DNA from: Octopus bimaculoides
Lineage: Eukaryota
Reading direction: 5' to 3'
Assembly (NCBI RefSeq): GCF_001194135.2
Contig: NC_068984.1
Coordinates: 15,941,389-16,005,388, forward strand
Length of the DNA: 64,000 bases
Shown: in pieces, positions 1,560-61,666 of the stretch
Layout: each line of letters opens with the position of its first letter
Numbering within the stretch: position 1 is the stretch's first letter
Notes under the pieces: generated by a model
What the model was told of the DNA's origin: nothing
Databases searched by the model: none
What the model saw: only the letters and a program-made list of their open reading frames with translations
Program-made: the position numbers and the translations under genes

Positions 1560-1653
1560 TTCCCTACCATTCTTTTTCTCTCTCTCTCACATACACACAC
1601 AACATGGTGACACTCAATGAAAAGGGAAGAAAGTTAGAAGTAATCTGGCTTAC

Positions 1654-2353
1654 CTCAGTACATTTGCGAAATCTTTTGGGACTTACTCCATACTTTGTAG
1701 AATTTGTTGCACTTATCTTCTTTTTTTGAGAGACACAGTTTAGTTTCCCTCGAGAATATATACAAAGAGGCAGGTGAGATTTCTGAGATTTTAATGAACT
1801 TTGGGTGATAGCTACGTTTTCAATCACAGCATTTGACTGTTTGGTTGGTTCAACATCGTTACACAGTAAACTGTTATTCAAAGAATGTTTTGAGGAGTCT
1901 GAGGTACATAGAACATTTGGGTGATGCTGCAGCTTCTGTGAAGAACAGTCTTGGTGGAGTAGAATACTCTCACCATTCCTCTGAACAATATCCAAATGAG
2001 AAATTTCATTAAGGGTATTACGTTGTTGATTCTGTTGGCTCATCGGATCCCCTGAAAGTTTCCGTACGGAGGTAGTTTGTTGGTGATAAGAGTTAGCTTT
2101 TGAAGGAATGTTACTCTGGTGACAATGGCTGTAGTTAGAACAATGACAGGATAATTCCCCAAATGATTTCAGGAATGACTGCTGTTCTGGATTCAAAGAG
2201 CCATTAGTCATGGTTTCATGGTCGAATGTAGCATTCTCTTTTTCCATTGATGGGGAATGTAGTTTCAAGACTGGAAATGTTGGCTGTGCACTACTATGAT
2301 AGGAATCATGTAGTTTGTTGCTTTGGTTAGACCCGAACATGGCTGCATTTAGC
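1654..2353 (-). CDS. Large internal or first coding exon (233 full codons) of an unidentified Ser/Asn/Gln/His-rich protein; the gene continues off the left edge
   Basis: Inside ORF 1564..2370(-). Acceptor gtgtttttctcttttag|G at 2353 and donor GAG|gtaagc at 1654. The 700 nt are open. In-frame ATG (MFGSNQ) at 2340-2338. NLS-like SPKRFRK near the exon end. No family recognised. Confidence 0.75.
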
Positions 2354-3799
2354 CTAAAAGAGAAAAACACAGAAATAGAATACGATCAATTAAATATAAC
2401 AACAAATTAAACAGTTTAATATTTAGCTTTTTTTAAAAAGAATTACCAAGTTTTTCAAATTCCTAACCTGTTACTCCCCACCACCTTCTACTGCTTAATC
2501 CCCACTCTTGATAATTTGGTTTTTTCCTTTCTTTTCTTCCTGTAAAAATGTTAATAAAAACAAAATCTAAGACCAAAAAGTAAAACATTAAAAAAAAAAT
2601 ACTTTGAATTTTTTTTTTTTGAAACATAGAATTACAAAAATTGTCATCATTAGCTCATCATATAAATTCAGCATTTACATGTATATATAAAGGTTCTCTG
2701 TGTATGCTATAACAATTTGTAGGTTTATATCTTTTCTGCATAGAGAATTTGTTCTGTTGTTACTGCTTTTCTTTGTGGCTTTCAGTTTTCCATCGTCTTT
2801 TTAAGATACATTTTGAGTAAACCAAGTCAGATATCTAATTTTTCTTTTCTAGCTAGAACATCTCCACTTACAGTGAAAAGATCTCAACCAGCTAGAAATA
2901 ATAGTCAAATACACCTAAAATCACATACTACTGTCTTAAATAAAATCATGAGATAATAGATTTTTAGATATCCTTAAAAAGACAGGATCATCACAGTTGG
3001 AATGTCTGATCATAGGTCTACCAAATTAAGGCCAACTTAGGGCTGAACAACATAGGAATCCTTTTCACCAACTCTCCTCTATAAACACGAGATTTCATGC
3101 TTCTTTTAGTCTAACTGAATTGGACTACTTTCAGAACAAGCTAACTGCTAGCCATACAAACAAGTGTTGCACATTCTTTCACTTACACTAAAAGTAACAA
3201 TAGCTTAAAAGAAATTGATGTTACACCTGTGCACATTCCTACACACCTGGCAGCACTGCTAGCATGGCTCATTAACTTATATATTTTTCATATGACAGCT
3301 GCAAATCTTAAAACTGAATTTCTAATGTATATGTATAGTTGAACTTATTTTATGTAATGTTAATGAGAATGAAAAGATTCTAGTTTCATTCTTGTAAAAT
3401 GCACAATAAAATACAAACAACCCAGTAGCTACCGAAGTTGAAAGGTATATGAATTACGAGACTGTTCAGTTATCAACACACACACACATAAGAGACAGAG
3501 AGAGAGAGATTAAAAGAGAAAAAAGAATTTAGTGAATAAATACTTTGCTAAAATAACGATGGGATCAAGCCAGGAATTTCTTGTGCAGCTGTGGGCAACA
3601 AGCCCAGCGGTACACAAGAAAATCTTTTCAAGTTGCAGAGAAAAATCAATGATAAAGTAGCAAAAATCAAATGTTAATTCGACACGTTGAAAAGTTAGCT
3701 CTGATTGCTAAGGTGGATGTTTCCGCCAGGTCAGGTAGATTACATTGATATTTTATTTTGTAAGAGAAGAAAGGTATTAAAAAAAAAGAAAAAAAACCT

Positions 3800-19082: not shown

Positions 19083-19181
19083 TTGTGGAGATGTCAGTTG
19101 TGACAGACTGTTTTACCAGGACTGGAACAACTGGTGCTATCAATGAATGTTCAGTCATTCGTTGTAATAAAAGACGGAATG
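19083..19181 (+). CDS. Candidate exon of gene B (VEMSVVTDCFTRTGTTGAINECSVIRCNKRRN)
   Basis: tttcagtttag| acceptor, AATG|gtgaga donor, 99 nt open, phase 1 to 1. Confidence 0.4.
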
Positions 19182-19204
19182 GTGAGAAGTTCTTTAAGTG
19201 TAGA

Positions 19205-19830
19205 GTGTCTTGAGAGAGGGAAGGAGGGAGAGGTAGAAGGAGAGGCAGGGAGAGGGAGAGAAAGGAGAGAAAGGAGAGAGCAGATAGAGGAGAGAGAGAT
19301 GGAGAGAGAGGAGAAAGAGAGATGGAGAGGGGAGAGAGATGGAAGAGGAAGAGAGATAGAGGGGGAGAGAGAGAGAGACAGAGAGAGAAGGAGAGAGAAA
19401 GAAAGAGAGAGGAGAGAGAGAGGAGAAAGACAGAGAGAGGAGAGAGAGAGAAGGAGAGAGACAGAGAGAGGAGAAAGAGAGGAGAGAGACAGAGGAGGAG
19501 AGACAGGGAGAGGAGGAAAGGAGAGAGAAAAAAGGAGAGAGAGATAGAGATAGAAGAGAGAGAAGAGTTAGAATCAGAGAATGTGTGTATATGAGAGGGA
19601 GAATGAGGAGAAAGAGAGAAAAGAAATAGAGATTGAATGGAAAAAATGAAGAGAAAGAAAGTGAAAAGAATGAAAGAAAGAAAAAATTGAAAAAGAGAAA
19701 AGTACCAGGAAAGAAAGAAAGAAAGAGAAAAGAGTAGGAAAGGAAAAGGAGAGAAAGTGAAAGAAAAAGGAAAGAGAGTAGAAAGAGAGAATAGGTGAGA
19801 GAAAGAAAGAGGAAAAGATGTAGATAGAGA
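19205..19830 (+). repeat. GA-rich low-complexity tract
   Basis: Near-pure purine tract; explains the ORFs at 19134-19892. Confidence 0.95.
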
Positions 19831-20104
19831 AACAGAATGTGTCTTTGTGAAAGTAATAAGATCTTGTAGTAGTTAGCTTTGGTAGATACCATATATTAAA
19901 GATTTCCTGACACCACTAATGGAAAAACACTTTTAACAATACACTTTAAATTTCATATTTCACAGCCTAACTTGCAGACATATTACAAAAGATAACTTAG
20001 ACATTACATACTTTTTATTATTTCATACGTTTTTTTTTTTTTTCTCCTTCACGAAAGAATAAAACAAAATAAAAATAAAACTACTCGTTTATTCATATGA
20101 AGTT

Positions 20105-32180: not shown

Positions 32181-33018
32181 GTAAATATTTGATTGTGTAA
32201 AAGATATTTATATAGTAACACGAAGACAGCTAACCTCAATTTTGCACATTCAATCTATTAGAAATGTCATTTTTTAATCTTATTTGTTTCAGTCACAGGA
32301 CTGTGGCTGTACGGGGACAGGTACTGCCTTGAAGGGTTTTAGTTAAACAAAACACCAGGACTTTATTTTTACATTTGATAATTATTTTAACCATCTCTTT
32401 TGCTGAACTGCTAAGTAATGGGAATGTAACTAAACCAACACTTTGTTGTTACGTCCCTGTTTCCAAGCAAAGTAATATTTCCTCACGGCCAGACATGTTT
32501 TCGCAGAATAATGGAAATGAATGACACAGCTTATGTGGTTGAAGCTTTGGTGAAGCTAGAGGGTGATACTCAAGCACTCAACTATCAGCACATTGCACCT
32601 TGCAGCAGAAACATCTGTAAGCTAATGAAGTAAATAATATAATTGTTCGTTCCTTTGTCAACCCATTTTATATATATATATAATACACTGTTCCATGCTG
32701 GTGAGGTCAACAAAAAAAGTACTTCATTTGGTGAGAGGAAAATATTTAATATACACAATACATGTTATTATGTGCTACTAATAATTTCATCATGGACTAT
32801 GATATGTAGTTTGTGCCTGATAAATATGTTTGGAGCATTTCTCAACATATGAAATTATTAGTAGCACATAAAAATATGTATTGTGTATATTAAATACTCT
32901 CTCTCTCACACACACAGGTGAATGGACAAACAAAAGAGAGGTATTCAACACAATAGGAATTTGTTCTGTAAGAAGCCTATGAAAGTAAGTTGCAAGGGGC
33001 TGAACCAAACTGTTTTAA

Positions 33019-34130: not shown

Positions 34131-34689
34131 CATTTTGTCATGTACATTTTTCTTCTCTACTTTGAGAAATTGCATTTTATAAGAACTTAATTCTAACAGG
34201 GCAGGAGATGGACATCTACCCAACAACCAATCTTCAAAAAAAAAAAAAGAAAAAAAAACAAATCCCACTTTAAAACGATGAAAGAAACAAAAGAAACCCA
34301 CCACTAGTGACCAGTCCGAATGCCAGAACTTGTCTCTAGAAAGATACTAGAATATTGATAGAAAGATACATAACATCTAATATTAACAAAAAATTATTTC
34401 TAATTAAGAAGACATTAACAGTTCACAAATATTTTCTGCCACCTTCATAATTAATCTAAAAAATGGTAGGCATATAGGTGCAGGCATGGTTGTGTGGTTA
34501 ACAAGATCACTTTCCAGCCATGGGCAAGTGTCTTCCACTATAATTCCAACTAGTTAAAGTTTTGTGAAATATAAAGGTTTCACTTAGGTATAAAGATGCT
34601 AATAACTTGGTGTTAGAACTTAATACATATATGCGTCAAAATAAAATGTTAGTTGAATACTAAGCATAATATGAGATTAAATAACTTAC

Positions 34690-35460
34690 TGCATCACAAA
34701 TATTGCCAAATATTTAATAAGTATATCATTAAGCTATCTTACTCCGCAGCCCCAAACCTTGCAGATGCTACAGATGAGACTAAGTTCAAAATAAACAATC
34801 CTAAACTATTTAAATATTTAGGTACCCCGAAACATAATAACCAACCACTAAATACCACTGGTTCTGACTCTCAAGCATCAAACGTCCCTAAGAACTCCAA
34901 TCCCTACAACATGGTCATCAATGGAACTCAACTAATGTTAGCTGGTAGAGTTGTTCACACAACAATATTTCTTTGGCACCTCTGCGAAAAACAGTCATCC
35001 AAACTGATTAAATATTAAATGTCAATATATCCAATACTATTGCAGGAGACCCCTAGTACTAAAACCTGTAATTTAAAAAGTACTTACAATTGCCCATTAA
35101 ATAGAAACTGTCTTGTCAAAAACATAGTATACAGGTGTCAAGTAGTTATGTGGGTAACTGCTAGAAAATACATAGGAGCTACAGCTAACAATTTCAAGAA
35201 ATACTTTTATATGCATGTGCACTCATTCAAAAATCCTAAATTGGTCTATTCAACTTCACTGGCCGAGTACATCTGGTAACTTAAAAATCTAAACACCCAC
35301 TACACCTTACAATGTAACACAGTGAAATTTGCAGCCCTGTACAAGGGGCAATGAAAGCCATGCTGATTATGCAACCAGGAAGCAATTCAAATTTGACTGT
35401 TTGACACACAATTTCTAAACAAATGAAATGAGTTGATTATCAATTGCAACAAAAAGATTC
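34690..35460 (+). mobile_element. Decayed Penelope-like retroelement (RT C-terminus plus GIY-YIG endonuclease)
   Basis: KLSYSAAPNL, then CN....CPLNRNCLVKNIVYRCQV...KYIGATANNFK...HSFKN...STSLAEYIW*LK...C*LC...FLNK*NEL, with in-frame stops. Confidence 0.85.
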
Positions 35461-35822
35461 TTTGAGCATTTAGATTTTCTTACAAAAGAATAATGGATCT
35501 AGCTTAATCTAACTCAATGCTAGCAAGGAATGCAAAAATACATAAAGAAATGAACTGGTGTAGTGAAGAAAAGAAAAACATTAGTTCATTGACTTTTATA
35601 TAAATTTATTTGGAGTTTGGGAACTATAGGGGATAACTGAATATGTTCCACTATTACAAGACTTTTTCAACAAATTACAGCCTCCTCTGTACTCTGCCAA
35701 GCGTAAATTTTGTTAGTGACTTTACATTTGTAAGTCATTGATAAATGTAAATTTATTCTTTGCCCATTAGAACTATAAGAAACCACCCCAGTGCTTTTCT
35801 CACTCACTCACTCACTCACCCA

Positions 35823-46003: not shown

Positions 46004-46159
46004 AAGAGAAAGAGAGAGAGAGAGAGAGATATTAGTTAGTACTATGTACTATTAATGACGAGAATGAAAAGATAGGTTTAGGTCTTAGTGGGAGTGGGGG
46101 TGGAGGGGAGAGAATCAATCCTGGTAGTTATTTTGAAACCTGATATTAATTACACTTTT

Positions 46160-46540
46160 GCACATTTCAGTCATTTGACTGTGGCCATGCTGCAGCACCA
46201 CATCTATTCAAAGAAATCGACCCCAGGACTTATTCTTTGTAAGCCTAGTACTTACTCTATCGGTCTCTTTTGCCGAACCACTAAGTTATGGGAATGTAAA
46301 CGCACCAGCATCGGTTGTCAAGCAACGTTGGTGGGGAGACAAACACAAACACAGACAGACACACACACACATATATATGACAAGCTTCTTTCAATTTCTG
46401 TCTACCAAATCCACACACAAGGCTTTGGTTGGCCTGAGGCTATAGTAGAAGACACTTGCCCAGGGTGCCATGCAGTGGGACTGAATCCGGAACCATGTAG
46501 TTGGTAAGCAAGATACTTACCACACAGCCACTCTTGCCCC
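46160..46540 (-). mobile_element. Family 1 SINE
   Basis: Full-length copy. Confidence 0.85.
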
Positions 46541-47321
46541 TGAACAGGTTTTAGTCTTATCAGACTTCCACAGCAAAGCAGACACCACATGTAAAATTAT
46601 TTTTAATTATTACTGCATTAAGTACATTAAAAATAATTCTTTTTTACATGAGAACATCTGAATGAATTTCTTTCAAAAGATTTATTTTTTTTAAACATGC
46701 AAATTTTTCACACTTGTTCGCGTACAACATTGTACATCAACTCAGTGGCTTTCTTAACACTTCTTTGACAAGAATGATGAAGTCTGCTTTGCTGAGGAGG
46801 TCATAACACGACCAAAACACAACGGAAGTTACCTCCCATACATGCTGAAATAATCCTAACAGCAACAGTCACTGAACTAAGACTGCCATTCCTCACCACA
46901 TAATTATTTCCAATTATGCTCACTACATTAAATATACTAACACTAACCCATTACTATTCATGTGAACGATGCTCATGACTAATTTCGTTCACTAGGTTTA
47001 TTTATTTAGAATGTCAATGGTCAAAGTGAAACAGTAGCTACACAAGTAATTTCAATATAAAGACGTTGTGAATGTTATATAATGATTAATTTGGCTCATT
47101 TATTTATAGAGCAAGTTGTTAATTAGACTTCAGTATAATGTTAATAAGTCATTTCTAAATATGTAACGTATTTAAAGTTGCTATATAAAACACTTTACTT
47201 TCCCATAAAACTGATTTCTAGTCATTCAGTAATATTTTATTTCACAGGTTCATTTGAATAAAAAAAACATGCACACACACACACACCTTTTATCTTTTAC
47301 TTGTTTCAGTATGTGTGTGTG

Positions 47322-47683
47322 TGTGTATAAGAAGGGATGACCACTAAGTGGACATCCAATATGCTAGAAAGAGGTCATCAACGACCCAACCACATTTTAT
47401 TTTATGAAGACAATTCGTGTATAGTTCTGCAAATTATATTGATTCTAGAACGATTGTGCTGAAGAGACCACAGATGTTGTTATGCAAGTAAAACGTTAAT
47501 GTCGAAACCGGTACACAATTATTTCTTTATTCTGTATATTTCTCATTTTGTCTTGTACGCTTATGTTCTGGTGTTTTGCGAAACTTTTTCTGGAGAGCAT
47601 TATTTTTCTTTGTGGTTGGGTCATTGATGACCTCTTTCTAGCATATTGGATGTCCACCTAGTGGTCATCCCTTCTTATACACA
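47322..47683. mobile_element. Non-autonomous foldback element with 73-bp terminal inverted repeats carrying a hammerhead ribozyme
   Basis: 47322-47394 is the reverse complement of 47611-47683 with 2 mismatches; adjoins a (TG)n tract and a truncated SINE tail. Confidence 0.85.
47453..47519 (+). ncRNA. Type I hammerhead ribozyme (minimal, Penelope-type)
   Basis: Stem I ATTGTG (47453-58) / CACAAT (47514-19); core CTGAAGA (47459-65); stem II GAC/GTC (47466-68/47501-03); GAAA (47504-07); palindromic helix III ACCGGT; cleavage triplet GUA ending at 47513. Confidence 0.8.
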
Positions 47684-47780
47684 TGTAATACAATTTTTCT
47701 GAATTTTCAGATTTTTTATATGCTAGGCCACTTGGTTTTAAATGGAATTAATATTCAATTTGTCACCTTCTATATATATA

Positions 47781-47819
<39 letters not shown>

Positions 47820-48199
47820 GAATATGAAGTGTGCATATTTGTGTATATGTCTATGAATATATTTATATTAAGGCAACAATGATGATGATGATAAAGGCAT
47901 CACATTGGTGGAATTGTCAGTGTTGGAAAAAATGTTTTTAGCATTTCTTCTGACTACATTCAGAGTTCAAATCCCAACTCCCTCTGAGATCATCTTTTCC
48001 TCCTCCAGGGGTTGATAAAATAAAGTACTGACTAAGCCCTCTTTTTCAAAAGTTGCTGACTTTGTGCTTGAATTAGAAACCCTATTTTTTTTTATTTCTG
48101 ATACCAATCCAGGCCTTATCAGAATGGAAAGCAGATGTAAAATGACGATGGTAATAAACTAGACAATTTTAATAACATATTACTTGAAAAACCTATGAC

Positions 48200-48399
48200 G
48201 CTTTTACTTGGTGCAGTCATTTGACTACAGCCATGCTGGAGCACTGCCTTCAGTCGAGCAAATCGACCCCAGGACTTATTCTTTGCAAGCCTAGTACTTA
48301 TTCTATCGGTCTTTTTTGCCAAACTGCTATGTTATGGAGACGTAAACACACCAGCATCGGTTGTCAAGCGATGTTGGGGGGACAAACACAGACACACAA

Positions 48400-48433
<34 letters not shown>

Positions 48434-48450
48434 NNNNNNNNNNCACACAA

Positions 48451-48493
<43 letters not shown>

Positions 48494-48660
48494 CACGACA
48501 GGCTTCTTTCAGTTTCCGTCTACCAAATCCACTCACAATGTTTTGATTGACCTGAGGCTATAGTAGAAGACACTTGCCCAAGGTACCACGCAGTGGGACT
48601 GAACCAAGAACCATGTGGTTCGTAAGCAAGCTACTTACCACACAGTCACTCCTGCGCCTA
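48200..48660 (-). mobile_element. Family 1 SINE spanning a 10-N gap
   Basis: Full-length copy; N at 48434-48443. Confidence 0.85.
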
Positions 48661-49909
48661 TTGTTGACAAACATGAGATGTGACCAGACCCAAAGAGCTT
48701 TGAAAGACAATATAAAATAAATGAAAATACTAAAATGATTATATTTAGATTATCTAGTGTCTGCAAAGAGAAACAGTTGAAGGATTACACAAAAAGAGCT
48801 GAGAACAAAGCAAAAACTAAAGTACAGCAACAATTGATGGTACAGCTACTTGTAATTATTATTTGTAGAACGTGTTTGGTTGGTTGAGTGAATAGAGATA
48901 CCAATAAACTAGTTGAAAAGTCAAAGGTTGTGTTGCTGAAATTGCTTAATTCCACAATGAATGCTGGTGTTTTTTTTTTTACCATAAGTTACAGCAGCAC
49001 CATAGAAATGTGATTTGTTATTGTTTAACTCCAGATCAACCCTGAGAGAGCAGATTTATAATCAAAGTGGTTGGGTTCCAGCCATGATCATCCAAATTTA
49101 TTTTCAGACAATATATTCAGAACTACATAATCCAATATGTACTTCTTTATTTTTACTGAAATAGTAAGGTGTGGTATGGGAATTTGGCTGCTATTTCTAG
49201 CACGTCAACTGACCACATTGTTGGATGACAAGATGAATATAAGGTAGACGTTCTCAATGTTTTGTGACTTGGGCCTCCTTTTACTAAATGGCCTTTTACA
49301 AAGCAACCACTTTGCACGGTTTTGAAGGAAAAAAAATCTAACATTAACTTTGTGCAGTGGTTTATTATCCAAATTTAAACCATGTCATCCTGCCTGTCCC
49401 CCTGTCTACATATTTGCATGGACTCCAATATTAAATGTTATGGAAATTTTTGAAGAAGTTGGTGGTATGCCTAGATCCTTTGTGCATCATCAGTCATGTT
49501 TCTCACCACAGATAACACAATGTCCGACTCACATTCTAAGCCTGACAGATTGTTTTTCTTTTTTGAAATGTATTCCTGTTGCCAAATCTCACCCGTTTCC
49601 AAGAAAGGTAAATACTTCCCTACGCATGGCCAGTCATGGACATTGCTTGTATGATGGTGATGTTTGTTTACAACTGTCAAGACAAAGAGAAAAACATACA
49701 GTACATGCTGAAAAATGGTTGGCATTAGGAAAGGCATCTAGCCATAGAAACCATGTCAAAGCAGACACTGGAGTAGGATGCCGTCTTTGGGCTGCATTCC
49801 ATTTTCTGCCTGCCAGAGGATATAGAAGATACTTGCCCAAAGACTGAACCCATGACCATGTGGTTAGGAATTGAACTTCTTAATCACATGGTTAGCCTGT
49901 GCCTCTCTT

Positions 49910-59433: not shown

Positions 59434-59619
59434 TGGGTAATTTTTCAGATTAACACCCGCAAGATCTTCACTAGGGTGTTAGGGTTAGGGTTTTAGGGTT
59501 TGGGTTAGGAAATTCCGTCCATAACTGTAACACTAACCCTAACCCTAAAACTAACCCTAAAACCCTAACCCTAACACCCTAGTGAAGATCGTGCGGGTGT
59601 TAATCTGAAAAATTACCCA
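59434..59619. mobile_element. 186-bp foldback element with inward-facing telomeric TTAGGG/CCCTAA repeats
   Basis: 59434-59500 matches the reverse complement of 59553-59619 at 66 of 67 nt; the inner part of each arm is TTAGGG-like repeats. Confidence 0.75.
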
Positions 59620-59786: not shown

Positions 59787-60689
59787 CCTGCCGTAAATAA
59801 TGTATATTTTTACACTTTCAAGACAGTAAGGTGTGATTTACCTGCTGTTTCTAGCAGGTCGAGTGACTACCTGGACGCTCTCTGTATAATTAAAATTCAC
59901 TGAGATGCTTCTAGGCCACGGACACCTTACCAAATACTGCTGCCATGGATATTTATATAGTTTAGGAGATGGGTTATGTTCGTAGCTGTAGTCAGGAAAA
60001 AAGGAAACCACTTTTCTGGGTTAATCTTCGTCTGAGGGACGAAAAAACTCAGTAATTTTTGCCGACGCAGTTTCCTTTACCTATACGAGTACATATATAG
60101 TATGACAACAGAATGTTGTTCAATTTCCGTTGGACGTACATTATAACTGTTAATTTTGGAAAATTCATTTCTGTTCTCTGTAATCGGTTATATTTTCATT
60201 TAACCCAATCGAACAATAACTGGGACGCACTTGACATCTCGGACGTTTCTTTTTTTCACACTGTCCATTCTTTATGTATGTTAGTTGTTGCTTAACGCTA
60301 TGTTAGTCCTGATTGACTAGACCTATGATGAAAAGCATTCCAGTCGTGACTGTCTCACCTATAGGGTATCTAAAAATATATTTTTTTTTAAAACAGTAGG
60401 ATATGATTTTGAGATGGGTTTAGCTGCTATTTTTAGCAAATTGAACGACCATGATAGGTTCTGATGACTTACTGCACTTATCGATGACGGTGTACATTCC
60501 AGTACATTGTTTGTGGCTAGTGAGATTATTGATGTTGCTATTTTTGAGTCTATGTACTTTTATTTGGACTGTGTATGTCACAGTGTTCTTAAGGTGGTAT
60601 TTTACTAATATTTTTAGGTGATGTAGAATTTAATCTTGGTTAAGCCATGCTATGCAGGTTGTTGGTTGAATGATGAAGTATGACTCGGG

Positions 60690-61270
60690 TCTACCTTCCC
60701 AGTTTTACAAGACCTTCATCATTTTGGCAACCATAGAGCGCAATCTTATATACATTGATGAATTGTATGAAAGCTTGGACATGTTGCATTTTGGATACTG
60801 TGCAGTATTTCTATGCTACACAGATTCTCGTGGTAGCGACAGCAGAGATGGGCAAGGTAACTTGGTCTGAGCATGACTGTTGCACTTCTTGGTGGTTTGC
60901 CTCCTAAATTAGTGTTTCAGACCTAAGAAGTCTATTGATTCTGTGGCTATTTCTGAATGTATATGTTCAGGTTGAGTGACAGTGACTGAGATATTGTTTT
61001 GAAGATGTAGTCATTGAAAATCCTTTGGGGGTTAGGATGAAAGATCACCGTCTGTTTGATATAACTTTGCGAGTCTACATGTCGTTATGTAGGCCAATAA
61101 GAGACCTACAAGTCTGCTTGCAGACTGAGCGTGGGAGAAGTGGTACTGTAGGTCATGTCACACTACCTTCTTCATTGACATTTATTGCTGAGATATTTGG
61201 TTCATGTATCGAAGTGTTGGGTTCTATAATAGATAATCCATTTCGTCGTGTGGCATTTGTTTACCAACGT
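60690..61270 (-). mobile_element. Highly decayed Penelope-like element fragment
   Basis: Frameshifted peptides IIYYRT..DT, LQYHFSHA, VIFHPNPQRIFNDYI and TCPS..NVYKIALYGCQ resemble the PLE RT thumb, linker and GIY-YIG motifs. Confidence 0.5.
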
Positions 61271-61615
61271 TTCTCACATGTACATATCATACTTCTTCAG
61301 ATTGCTTTTGTCTTTGGAACCACTTCATTTGTCCTCGTGTGTGCTTTCCTTCGTTCACCTTGAAGTAAAACAGTTGTTCGTCATCATCATCATCATCATT
61401 CAACATCCTTTTTGCCATGCTTATATGTGTTGGACGGAGTTTATTGAAGCAGATTTCTACGGCTGGCTGTCCTTCCTGTCATCAATCCTCACTGGTTTCC
61501 AAGCAAGGTAAAATTTCTCCATGGCCAGATATGATCTTGCAGAATACTGGAAATGAATGACATTGCTTGTGTGACAGTGACATTCACTTACAACCGTCAG
61601 GCAATGTCACGGCAA

Positions 61616-61666
<51 letters not shown>

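What the first reader, a model, noticed from the sequence alone, without database searches (positions are those of the whole stretch)
47322..47683. Terminal-inverted-repeat foldback element carrying an intact hammerhead ribozyme
Seen: 73-bp arms (47322-47394 and 47611-47683) are reverse complements with only 2 mismatches, so the insertion is young or constrained. Between them lies a complete type I hammerhead on the plus strand: ATTGTG-CTGAAGA-GAC[32 nt]GTC-GAAA-CCGGT-A-CACAAT. All core nucleotides are present, stem I is a perfect 6 bp, and helix III is the palindrome ACCGGT. Established: minimal type I hammerheads with a palindromic helix III that act as dimers are typical of Penelope-like elements (PLEs) and of non-autonomous retrozymes, which normally carry them in direct repeats or pLTRs. 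Inference: a single hammerhead inside a MITE-like inverted-repeat shell is an unusual architecture. It could be a new non-autonomous, ribozyme-processed mobile family (a long hairpin RNA self-cleaved in its loop, perhaps mobilised by PLE enzymes; PLE remnants lie at 34.7 and 60.7 kb), a DNA MITE that captured a PLE ribozyme, or an inverted PLE pLTR relic. If it is intronic, it could cleave a host pre-mRNA.
Basis: partly seen in the sequence, partly recalled or inferred. Interest (0 to 1): 0.9.

Follow-up and report, generated by a model that had tools for sequence, protein, structure and literature searches.

The report
Hammerhead-bearing retroelement stub with inverted partner
A 362-bp insertion with 73-bp inverted ends really does carry a hammerhead ribozyme motif, but it is most simply read as an ordinary dead fragment of a Penelope-like retroelement inserted head-to-head, not as a new kind of mobile element.

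Summary
The sequence facts hold. The arms 47322-47394 and 47611-47683 are 73 nt long and differ by two transitions. Between them, on the plus strand at 47452-47520, lies a hammerhead motif with an exact core. It has a 6+1 bp helix I and a helix III made of one A-U pair capping the palindrome CCGG. Such a motif is expected about 1e-7 to 1e-5 times per 64-kb window by chance.

The ribozyme is structurally marginal. Helix II is only 3 bp closing a 32-nt loop that folds no better than shuffled sequence. No Rfam hammerhead model scores even at E<=10. The monomer's best fold sequesters the core.

No second copy of the arms or the interior was found in the window or in any collection I could reach, so family status, covariation and target-site duplications (TSDs) remain untested.

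The architecture matches what is published for Penelope-like elements (PLEs): 5'-truncated copies, often with an inverted 5'-truncated copy abutting, inserted in microsatellites, with the hammerhead near the 3' end. My best reading (about 0.5) is a truncated PLE or retrozyme 3' fragment plus a 73-nt inverted partner, now inert. A new ribozyme-bearing foldback family is not excluded (about 0.12). The claimed PLE remnants at 34.7 and 60.7 kb got no Pfam support.

The parts
47311..47329 (.). (TG)n followed by TATA: the microsatellite into which the element is inserted. TATA 47326-47329 is repeated at 47676-47679, so it is a candidate TA or TATA target-site duplication. It is ambiguous because TATA is its own reverse complement.
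   Evidence: Direct reading. The outer 8 nt of the 'arms' (TGTGTATA / TATACACA) may be target sequence rather than element.
47322..47394 (-). Left arm. Read here as a 73-nt inverted, 5'-truncated copy of the element's 3' end, with that 3' end pointing outward to the left.
   Evidence: 97% reverse complement of 47611-47683 with two transitions. No other copy in the window. Contains near-palindromes GGATGACCACTAAGTGGACATCC and GGTCATCAACGACC. Folds better than shuffles, z -2.4.
47395..47451 (+). Interior upstream of the ribozyme. Read here as the 5'-truncated start of the longer, plus-oriented copy; the 5'-to-5' junction lies at 47394/47395.
   Evidence: Complementarity to the other arm ends abruptly here. 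AT-rich: the interior is 31.5% GC against 43.8% in the arms.
47452..47520 (+). Type I hammerhead motif. Helix I 47452-47458 / 47514-47520. Core CUGAAGA 47459-47465. Helix II GAC 47466-47468 / GUC 47501-47503 with 32-nt loop 47469-47500. GAA 47504-47506. Helix III A47507-CCGG-U47512. Cleavage site after A47513.
   Evidence: only hit in the window. (chance 8e-8 to 1.4e-5 per window). (no Rfam hammerhead hit). (hammerhead fold -9.7 against MFE -13.9 kcal/mol). (helix II segment z -0.10).
47521..47610 (+). Interior downstream of the ribozyme, continuous with the right arm. Read here as 3' region of the parent element.
   Evidence: No similarity elsewhere in the window. Translations of the element's six longest stop-free stretches, which cover this segment in all three plus-strand frames and two minus-strand frames, found no protein relative.
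47611..47683 (+). Right arm. Read here as the 3'-terminal 73 nt of the longer copy. The element proper probably ends at ...CCCTTCT (47675), followed by TATA.
   Evidence: No poly(A) or A-rich tail at the end.

Best explanation
This is a dead, strongly 5'-truncated insertion of a hammerhead-bearing retroelement of the Penelope-like or non-LTR-retrozyme lineage, laid down head-to-head.

Anatomy under this reading. One copy, 47395 to about 47679 on the plus strand, keeps the last ~285 nt of the RNA. Its hammerhead cleavage site lies about 165 nt from the copy's 3' end. A second copy, from about 47326 to 47394 and inverted, keeps only the last ~70 nt. Both 3' ends face outward and the two truncated 5' ends meet at 47394/47395. 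That geometry automatically produces 73-nt 'terminal inverted repeats' around a unique 'loop'.

How it formed (inferred). The PLE endonuclease nicked both strands of a (TG)n-(TA)n microsatellite. Each 3'-OH then primed reverse transcription from the 3' region of the element's RNA.

Ribozyme role (established for the family, not for this copy). In the parent element, two hammerheads in tandem pLTRs or repeats pair through the palindromic helix III and cut after GUA. At this locus a single copy with a one-base-pair helix III and a 3-bp helix II is expected to be essentially inactive.

Any present-day effect would come from the 73-bp hairpin if the locus is transcribed (a dsRNA substrate). That is speculation.
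For: Hammerhead motif is real and non-random.

Its helix III, a single A-U pair plus the palindromic tetraloop CCGG, together with G10.1-C11.1, are the features listed for metazoan type I and PLE hammerheads (PMC4209133, PMC7229834).

The geometry matches published PLE behaviour:
- Inverted 5'-truncated copy adjacent, forming inverted repeats, and a microsatellite insertion bias (PMC8557442).
- Both target strands cleaved and extended in vitro (PMC11167929).
- Reverse transcription starting about 90 nt downstream of the hammerhead cut site in the anole PLE, the same order as the ~165 nt here (PMC11167929).
- Opposite-strand hammerhead pairs 100-700 bp apart in Schistosoma (PMC4209133).

The element sits exactly at a (TG)n/TATA junction and has no A-tail.

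The arms are not a common repeat: one copy each, against about 20 for the neighbouring SINE-like repeat.

The only hammerhead motif in 64 kb lies inside one of only three short high-identity foldbacks, whose loops together make up about 0.5% of the window. That argues for a mechanistic link between the ribozyme and the inverted repeat.
Against: No sequence link to any PLE was obtained. There is no RT or GIY-YIG beside the element and no similarity to the rest of the window. No related DNA or ORF turned up in any reachable collection.

The helix II form (3 bp, 32-nt loop, folding like random sequence) departs from the long 6-8 bp helix II and the extra base between positions 9 and 10.1 described for PLE min-hammerheads (PMC4209133).

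No 30-40-bp one-sided 'tail' is seen.

Short foldbacks occur elsewhere in the window without ribozymes, so a PLE is not needed to make an inverted repeat here.

A TA/TATA flank is equally what a Tc1/mariner-type MITE would show.
Confidence: 0.5

Rival explanations
1. A genuine non-autonomous foldback family. This would be a MITE-like or hairpin-RNA element whose fixed terminal inverted repeats enclose a hammerhead. It would be moved either by a DNA transposase (TA target) or by PLE enzymes acting on a ribozyme-processed hairpin RNA.
For: Near-perfect 73-bp inverted repeats ending at the same nucleotides. Flanking TA/TATA is compatible with a Tc1/mariner-type duplication. Each arm carries repeated GATGACC/GGTCATC half-sites that could be protein-binding sites; 2 of the 3 copies of each orientation in the window lie in the element. 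The hammerhead is non-random. A literature search found no prior report of this combination, so it would be new.
Against: No second copy in 64 kb or in any collection searched. A known process already yields this geometry (PMC8557442, PMC11167929). The termini (AGAAGGG...) do not resemble any transposase TIR I can name (from memory, not tested). The ribozyme would need a partner copy to dimerise.
Confidence: 0.12
2. A solitary PLE- or retrozyme-derived hammerhead relic next to which a local 73-bp inverted duplication arose by a replication or repair template switch at the microsatellite. The arms would have nothing to do with transposition.
For: Two other short high-identity foldbacks occur in the same 64 kb: 59434-59619, built on telomere-type repeats, and 32738-32901. 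Hairpin-forming inverted duplications therefore arise readily in this genome. The element abuts (TG)n/(TA)n tracts.
Against: It requires the only hammerhead in the window to fall by coincidence in about 0.5% of the sequence. The duplicated segment would have to end exactly at the microsatellite on both sides.
Confidence: 0.15
3. Chance hammerhead look-alike inside an unrelated foldback or MITE.
For: Its 32-nt loop folds like shuffled sequence, z -0.10. No Rfam hammerhead model matches at E<=10. The monomer MFE uses a competing pairing (P 0.7-0.99) that buries C3-G5. With loose criteria, chance gives 0.025-0.06 motifs per window, and the first stage read many windows.
Against: With G10.1-C11.1, a palindromic helix III and a 6-bp helix I, the expectation is 1.6e-6 to 1.4e-5 per window, and 8e-8 for the exact form. 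That is at most about 0.6 per 2.7 Gb of sequence (about 42,000 such windows). The GC-rich palindrome CCGG sits in a 31.5% GC interior. The motif co-locates with a transposon-like structure.
Confidence: 0.08
4. Monomeric unit of a non-LTR retrozyme (tandem-repeat circRNA element) that still yields a processed RNA.
For: Type I hammerhead with a newt-like helix III (PMC7229834). Dispersed monomer copies of retrozymes are common and derive from PLE pLTRs (bioRxiv 10.64898/2026.07.22.740005). Size and low GC fit (about 290 nt, 31-44% GC).
Against: There is one hammerhead only and no direct or tandem repeat, so neither double cleavage nor cis-dimerisation is possible. No loop 1 / loop 2 tertiary-contact architecture is evident.
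Confidence: 0.1

Closest known systems
Hammerhead ribozymes in the pseudo-LTRs of Penelope-like elements (Cervera & de la Pena 2014, PMC4209133) and the tandem/inverted insertion structure of PLEs (Craig et al. 2021, PMC8557442; PMC11167929)
   Same: Type I topology. Exact core. G10.1-C11.1. Palindromic 15.2-16.2 and loop 3 implying action as a dimer. Occurrence as a solitary motif in a truncated copy. An inverted 5'-truncated partner creating inverted repeats. A microsatellite target. The ribozyme lies 100-200 nt from the insertion's 3' end.
   Different: Helix II is 3 bp with a 32-nt loop instead of 6-8 bp with a short loop. There is no extra base between positions 9 and 10.1. Helix I is longer (6-7 bp against 4-5). 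No RT/GIY-YIG ORF, pLTR direct repeat or 'tail' is present, and no sequence similarity to any PLE could be tested.
Newt satellite 2 / axolotl HHR_Amex1 hammerheads and metazoan non-LTR retrozymes (PMC7229834; bioRxiv 10.64898/2026.07.22.740005)
   Same: Helix III is a single base pair capped by a palindromic tetraloop, so it is weak as a monomer and active as a dimer. AT-rich unit of about 300 nt. Dispersed monomer derivatives exist.
   Different: Those sit in head-to-tail tandem repeats with conserved loop 1 / loop 2 contacts and a 4-bp helix II. Here there is one copy, no direct repeat and inverted arms instead.
Schistosoma hammerhead-bearing repeats (cited in PMC4209133)
   Same: Dispersed, non-coding, a few hundred bp, each carrying one type I hammerhead. 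Opposite-strand pairs 100-700 bp apart were noted for the PLE-type motifs.
   Different: No sequence relation was tested. Those elements are not bounded by inverted repeats.
MITEs / foldback DNA elements
   Same: Short, non-coding, near-identical terminal inverted repeats, possible TA duplication, AT-rich interior.
   Different: No family copies found, no recognisable transposase-type termini, and no MITE is known to me to carry a hammerhead (none found).

Membership tests
Hammerhead ribozyme, type I | Conserved core C3 U4 G5 A6 N7 G8 A9 / G12 A13 A14 / A15.1-U16.1 / H17 not G | tested here: met
   CTGAAGA 47459-47465, GAA 47504-47506, A47507, T47512, A47513.
Hammerhead ribozyme, type I | Three helices around the core, with helix I open | tested here: inconclusive
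   Helix I is 6 Watson-Crick pairs plus 1 G.U. Helix III is one A-U pair plus CCGG, so it forms only as a dimer. Helix II is just 3 bp, and its 38-nt segment folds like shuffles (z -0.10). The hammerhead fold is 4.2 kcal/mol above the MFE.
Hammerhead ribozyme, type I | Scores with a curated covariance model (Rfam hammerhead families) | tested here: not met
   No match at gathering score in the window, nor at E<=10 in 47250-47750. From my own knowledge, PLE-type minimal hammerheads are generally poorly covered by these models.
Hammerhead ribozyme, type I | Self-cleavage, and covariation in the helices among relatives | not testable with these tools
   No related copy obtained.
Penelope-like element insertion | RT plus GIY-YIG ORF, or sequence similarity to a PLE pLTR | tested here: not met
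Translations of the element's six longest stop-free stretches found no protein relative. No similarity to other window sequence. Comparison with Repbase or cephalopod PLE consensus sequences was not possible.
Penelope-like element insertion | 5'-truncated copy with an adjacent inverted 5'-truncated copy (3' ends outward), a microsatellite target, and a hammerhead in sense near the 3' end | tested here: met
   The geometry and flanks match the descriptions in PMC8557442 and PMC11167929. Any hammerhead in the loop would fit in either orientation, so this test is weak.
Non-LTR retrozyme | Head-to-tail tandem repeats, each with a hammerhead | tested here: not met
   No direct repeats other than microsatellites in 46500-48500. 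A single hammerhead in 64 kb.
MITE (DNA-transposon derivative) | Terminal inverted repeats with a target-site duplication of fixed length | tested here: inconclusive
   TIRs are present. TA/TATA flanks both ends but is palindromic and part of a microsatellite. There is no 8-bp duplication.
MITE (DNA-transposon derivative) | Many copies with the same boundaries | not testable with these tools
   No other copy in the window. The source genome is not searchable here. Exact-pattern scans of other collections gave only 20-22-nt chance matches.

The most novel reading that the evidence does not exclude
The 362-bp unit is one member of an undescribed family of ribozyme-bearing foldback elements. Its transcript would form a 73-bp hairpin with a dimer-dependent hammerhead in the loop. 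It would be processed and mobilised in trans by PLE machinery, or would be a DNA MITE that captured a PLE ribozyme.
Probability: 0.12. Interest if true: 0.65.

Novelty: new member of a known kind. Interest (0 to 1): 0.22.

Why it matters
If the best reading is right, this is one more solitary Penelope-type hammerhead relic. Its main value is as a clean, small, young example (arms 97% identical) of the head-to-head insertion product expected when a PLE enzyme primes reverse transcription from both target strands.

It would matter more if genome-wide copies showed fixed inverted-repeat boundaries. That would define a hammerhead-carrying foldback family and link ribozyme processing to hairpin RNAs.

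In either case, a 73-bp perfect hairpin in a transcribed region would be a substrate for dsRNA pathways. That is inference only.

Tried and rejected
1. Rfam covariance models found no hammerhead, either over the whole window at gathering score or over 501 nt at E<=10. The only 'hits' were miRNA-precursor models matching the long hairpin and the microsatellites.

2. blastn of the element and its flanks against the window found only the two arms matching each other, plus microsatellites and a 24-nt SINE piece.

3. Strict and relaxed hammerhead scans, including the U3-A8 core variant and a bulge after A9, found no second motif.

4. Exact-pattern scans used two arm segments. The first (22 nt) was run against metagenome, prokaryote-genome and viral contigs and gave nothing. 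The second (20 nt) was run against metagenome and prokaryote-genome contigs and gave only two 20-22-nt chance matches, L001 and L002.

5. A protein route to other copies failed. Exact look-ups of one ORF inside the element and two elsewhere in the window were not on record. A concatenated query of the element's six longest stop-free translations found no homologue.

6. Pfam on six frames of 34300-35790 and about 60000-61620 gave nothing relevant. A GIY-YIG-like string at 35058-35462 found no homologue.

7. Supplements of the two key PLE papers, which might have held cephalopod consensus sequences, are not held as text.

8. Rejected: two independent insertions of a common repeat. The arms are single-copy in the window, equal in length and end at the same bases.

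9. Rejected: assembly palindrome artefact. There are two mismatches and a 216-nt unique loop.

10. Rejected: L1-type twin priming, because it inverts a segment without duplicating it.

Full report
**Observation**

The stretch 47322-47683 is as described. The repeat finder reports arms 47322-47394 and 47611-47683, 73 nt and 97% complementary, with 216 nt between them. The two differences are transitions, one of them at a CpG. Complementarity ends abruptly on both the outer and inner sides.

The outermost 8 nt of the arms (TGTGTATA / TATACACA) belong to a (TG)n-TATA-(CA)2 context. The element proper is therefore probably 47330-47675 (AGAAGGG...CCCTTCT), flanked on each side by TATA.

On the plus strand, 47452-47520 reads GATTGTG-CTGAAGA-GAC[32 nt]GTC-GAA-A-CCGG-T-A-CACAATT. 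Every invariant hammerhead position is present:
- G10.1-C11.1 closes helix II.
- Helix I has 6 Watson-Crick pairs plus a G.U.
- H17 is A47513.
- Helix III is one A-U pair over the palindrome CCGG.

**Is it more than chance?**

A scan that required only T16.1 in helix III finds this one motif in the window. First-order Markov sequence of the same size gives 0.025-0.06 such motifs. That alone would not be convincing across many windows.

The estimate falls sharply with tighter criteria: G10.1-C11.1, at least 3 bp in helix II, a loop of 3-40 nt, a palindromic helix III of any of four lengths, and a 6-bp helix I. The expectation then is 1.6e-6 (Watson-Crick only) to 1.4e-5 (G.U allowed) per window, and 8e-8 for the exact form seen. 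Over 2.7 Gb of sequence (about 42,000 such windows) that is at most about 0.6 chance motifs. I conclude that the motif descends from a real hammerhead lineage, with roughly 8% left for coincidence.

**How good a ribozyme is it?**

It is marginal, on four counts:
- No Rfam hammerhead family matches, at gathering score over the window or at E<=10 over 501 nt.
- Helix II is 3 bp. The 38-nt helix II segment can draw a GNRA-capped AU/GU hairpin, but at -4.4 kcal/mol it is indistinguishable from shuffles (z -0.10).
- The 69-nt monomer prefers a competing pairing, UGUGCUG with CGGUACA, that buries C3-G5. That fold is -13.9 kcal/mol against -9.7 for the hammerhead fold. Helix I pairs have probability 0.07-0.15 and the competing pairs 0.70-0.99.
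- Helix III cannot form in a monomer. An ACCGGU self-duplex is worth about -8 to -10 kcal/mol, which is the dimer mode described for newt, axolotl and PLE hammerheads (PMC7229834, PMC4209133).

The arms differ by only 2.7%, so the weak helix II was probably already present in the parent RNA rather than caused by decay in place. This is inference.

**Search for relatives**

Nothing else in the 64 kb resembles the arms or the interior. By contrast, a neighbouring SINE-like repeat has about 20 copies. Relaxed scans find no second hammerhead.

The source genome is not available in these tools, so I tried indirect routes:
- Exact scans of two arm segments, across metagenome, prokaryote-genome and viral contigs for the first and the first two of these for the second, gave only two 20-22-nt chance matches.
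- Look-ups of window ORFs found nothing on record.
- A concatenated protein query of the element's six longest stop-free translations found no homologue.

Copy number, co-occurrence of arms and ribozyme, covariation and true target-site duplications therefore remain untested.

**Surroundings**

The left flank is (CA)n, then a 24-nt SINE fragment, then (TG)n. Further (TA)n tracts lie to the right.

There are no RT or GIY-YIG Pfam matches at E<=1 in six frames of 34300-35790 or about 60000-61620. By eye, a plus-frame peptide at 35058-35462 looks GIY-YIG/CCHH-like (…NIVYRCQV…YIGAT…C.LC…). It has stops, and it found no homologue. This is a lead only.

The window holds two other short high-identity foldbacks, at 59434-59619 and 32738-32901. 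Inverted duplications are therefore not rare here. Their loops together cover only about 0.5% of the window, and the single hammerhead lies in one of them. That favours a causal link between the ribozyme and the inverted repeat.

**Explanation**

The published behaviour of Penelope-like elements supplies that link without anything new:
- Insertions are highly 5'-truncated and form partial tandems. [quoted passage not shown] Targets are biased to microsatellites (PMC8557442).
- A purified anole PLE protein cleaves and extends both target strands. It starts reverse transcription about 90 nt downstream of the hammerhead cut site (PMC11167929).
- PLE hammerheads occur mostly as solitary motifs in truncated copies, and sometimes as opposite-strand pairs 100-700 bp apart (PMC4209133).
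- Animal retrozymes and their dispersed monomers derive from PLE pLTRs (bioRxiv 10.64898/2026.07.22.740005).

If both nicked strands prime on the RNA's 3' region, both element 3' ends face outward and the truncated 5' ends meet inside. Here that means a ~285-nt copy in plus orientation, carrying the hammerhead about 165 nt from its 3' end, abutting a ~70-nt inverted copy that is too short to reach the ribozyme. The arm length is then just the length of the shorter copy.

I give this reading 0.5. The steps of this mechanism are inferred. What is shown is only the geometry, the target context and the type of ribozyme.

**Rivals**

- A true foldback or MITE-like family with a hammerhead (0.12).
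- A local inverted duplication beside a solitary relic (0.15).
- A retrozyme monomer that is still processed (0.10). Against it: a single hammerhead and no direct repeats.
- A chance motif (0.08).

The features against the best reading are the absence of any sequence tie to a PLE, the atypical helix II, the lack of the extra base between positions 9 and 10.1, and the TA/TATA flank, which a Tc1/mariner-type MITE would also show.

**Comparison and novelty**

The ribozyme works like the dimer-dependent type I hammerheads of PLE pLTRs and non-LTR retrozymes.
- Membership of the hammerhead class is met on the core and on helices I and III, inconclusive on helix II, and failed on the Rfam models.
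- Membership of a PLE insertion is met on architecture only.
- Membership of retrozymes fails on tandem repeats.
- Membership of MITEs is undecided.

I file it as a new member of a known kind, of low interest unless genome-wide copies show fixed inverted-repeat boundaries.

Noticed in passing
window 59434-59619: A foldback with 76-nt arms (95% complementary, 34-nt loop). The inner halves of the arms are head-to-head telomere-type repeats, (TTAGGG)n facing (CCCTAA)n, flanked by unique inverted sequence. This is an interstitial telomeric inverted repeat of unknown origin.
   Followed up: partly
window 32738-32901: An AT-rich foldback with 53-nt arms (92% complementary, 58-nt loop). Its loop holds CTGATAA...GAAA with a 7-bp helix II. 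This is a hammerhead near-miss (A instead of G8) and not a ribozyme.
   Followed up: partly
window 46150-46541, 48189-48662 and about 18 other places: A SINE-like repeat of about 20 copies per 64 kb. It begins TTTTACTTGTTTCAGTCATTTGACTG.GGCCATGCTGGAGCAC and usually lies next to (CA)n/(TA)n microsatellites. A 24-nt piece of it (47287-47310) lies just left of the element.
   Followed up: partly
window 35058-35462 (+): A degenerate reading frame, with stops, that shows a GIY-YIG-like and CxxC string (NIVYRCQV…YIGAT…C.LCNQEAIQI). It is possibly an endonuclease remnant of a Penelope-like or Naiad-type element. There was no Pfam hit and no homologue found.
   Followed up: partly
window 1564-2370 (-): A 268-aa open frame rich in Ser, Asn and Gln that could be a host coding exon. 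It is not on record by exact look-up and was not searched further, so the genic or intronic status of the element is unknown.
   Followed up: no
window 19134-19892: A purine/pyrimidine-skewed low-complexity tract that gives long Glu/Arg-rich and Leu/Ser-rich ORFs on opposite strands. It is probably a simple repeat, not a gene.
   Followed up: no
window about 35.8-36.4 kb, 38.1-38.6 kb, 48433-48443: Runs of N (1052 in all) mark assembly gaps. One lies 750 bp to the right of the element, inside a microsatellite.
   Followed up: no
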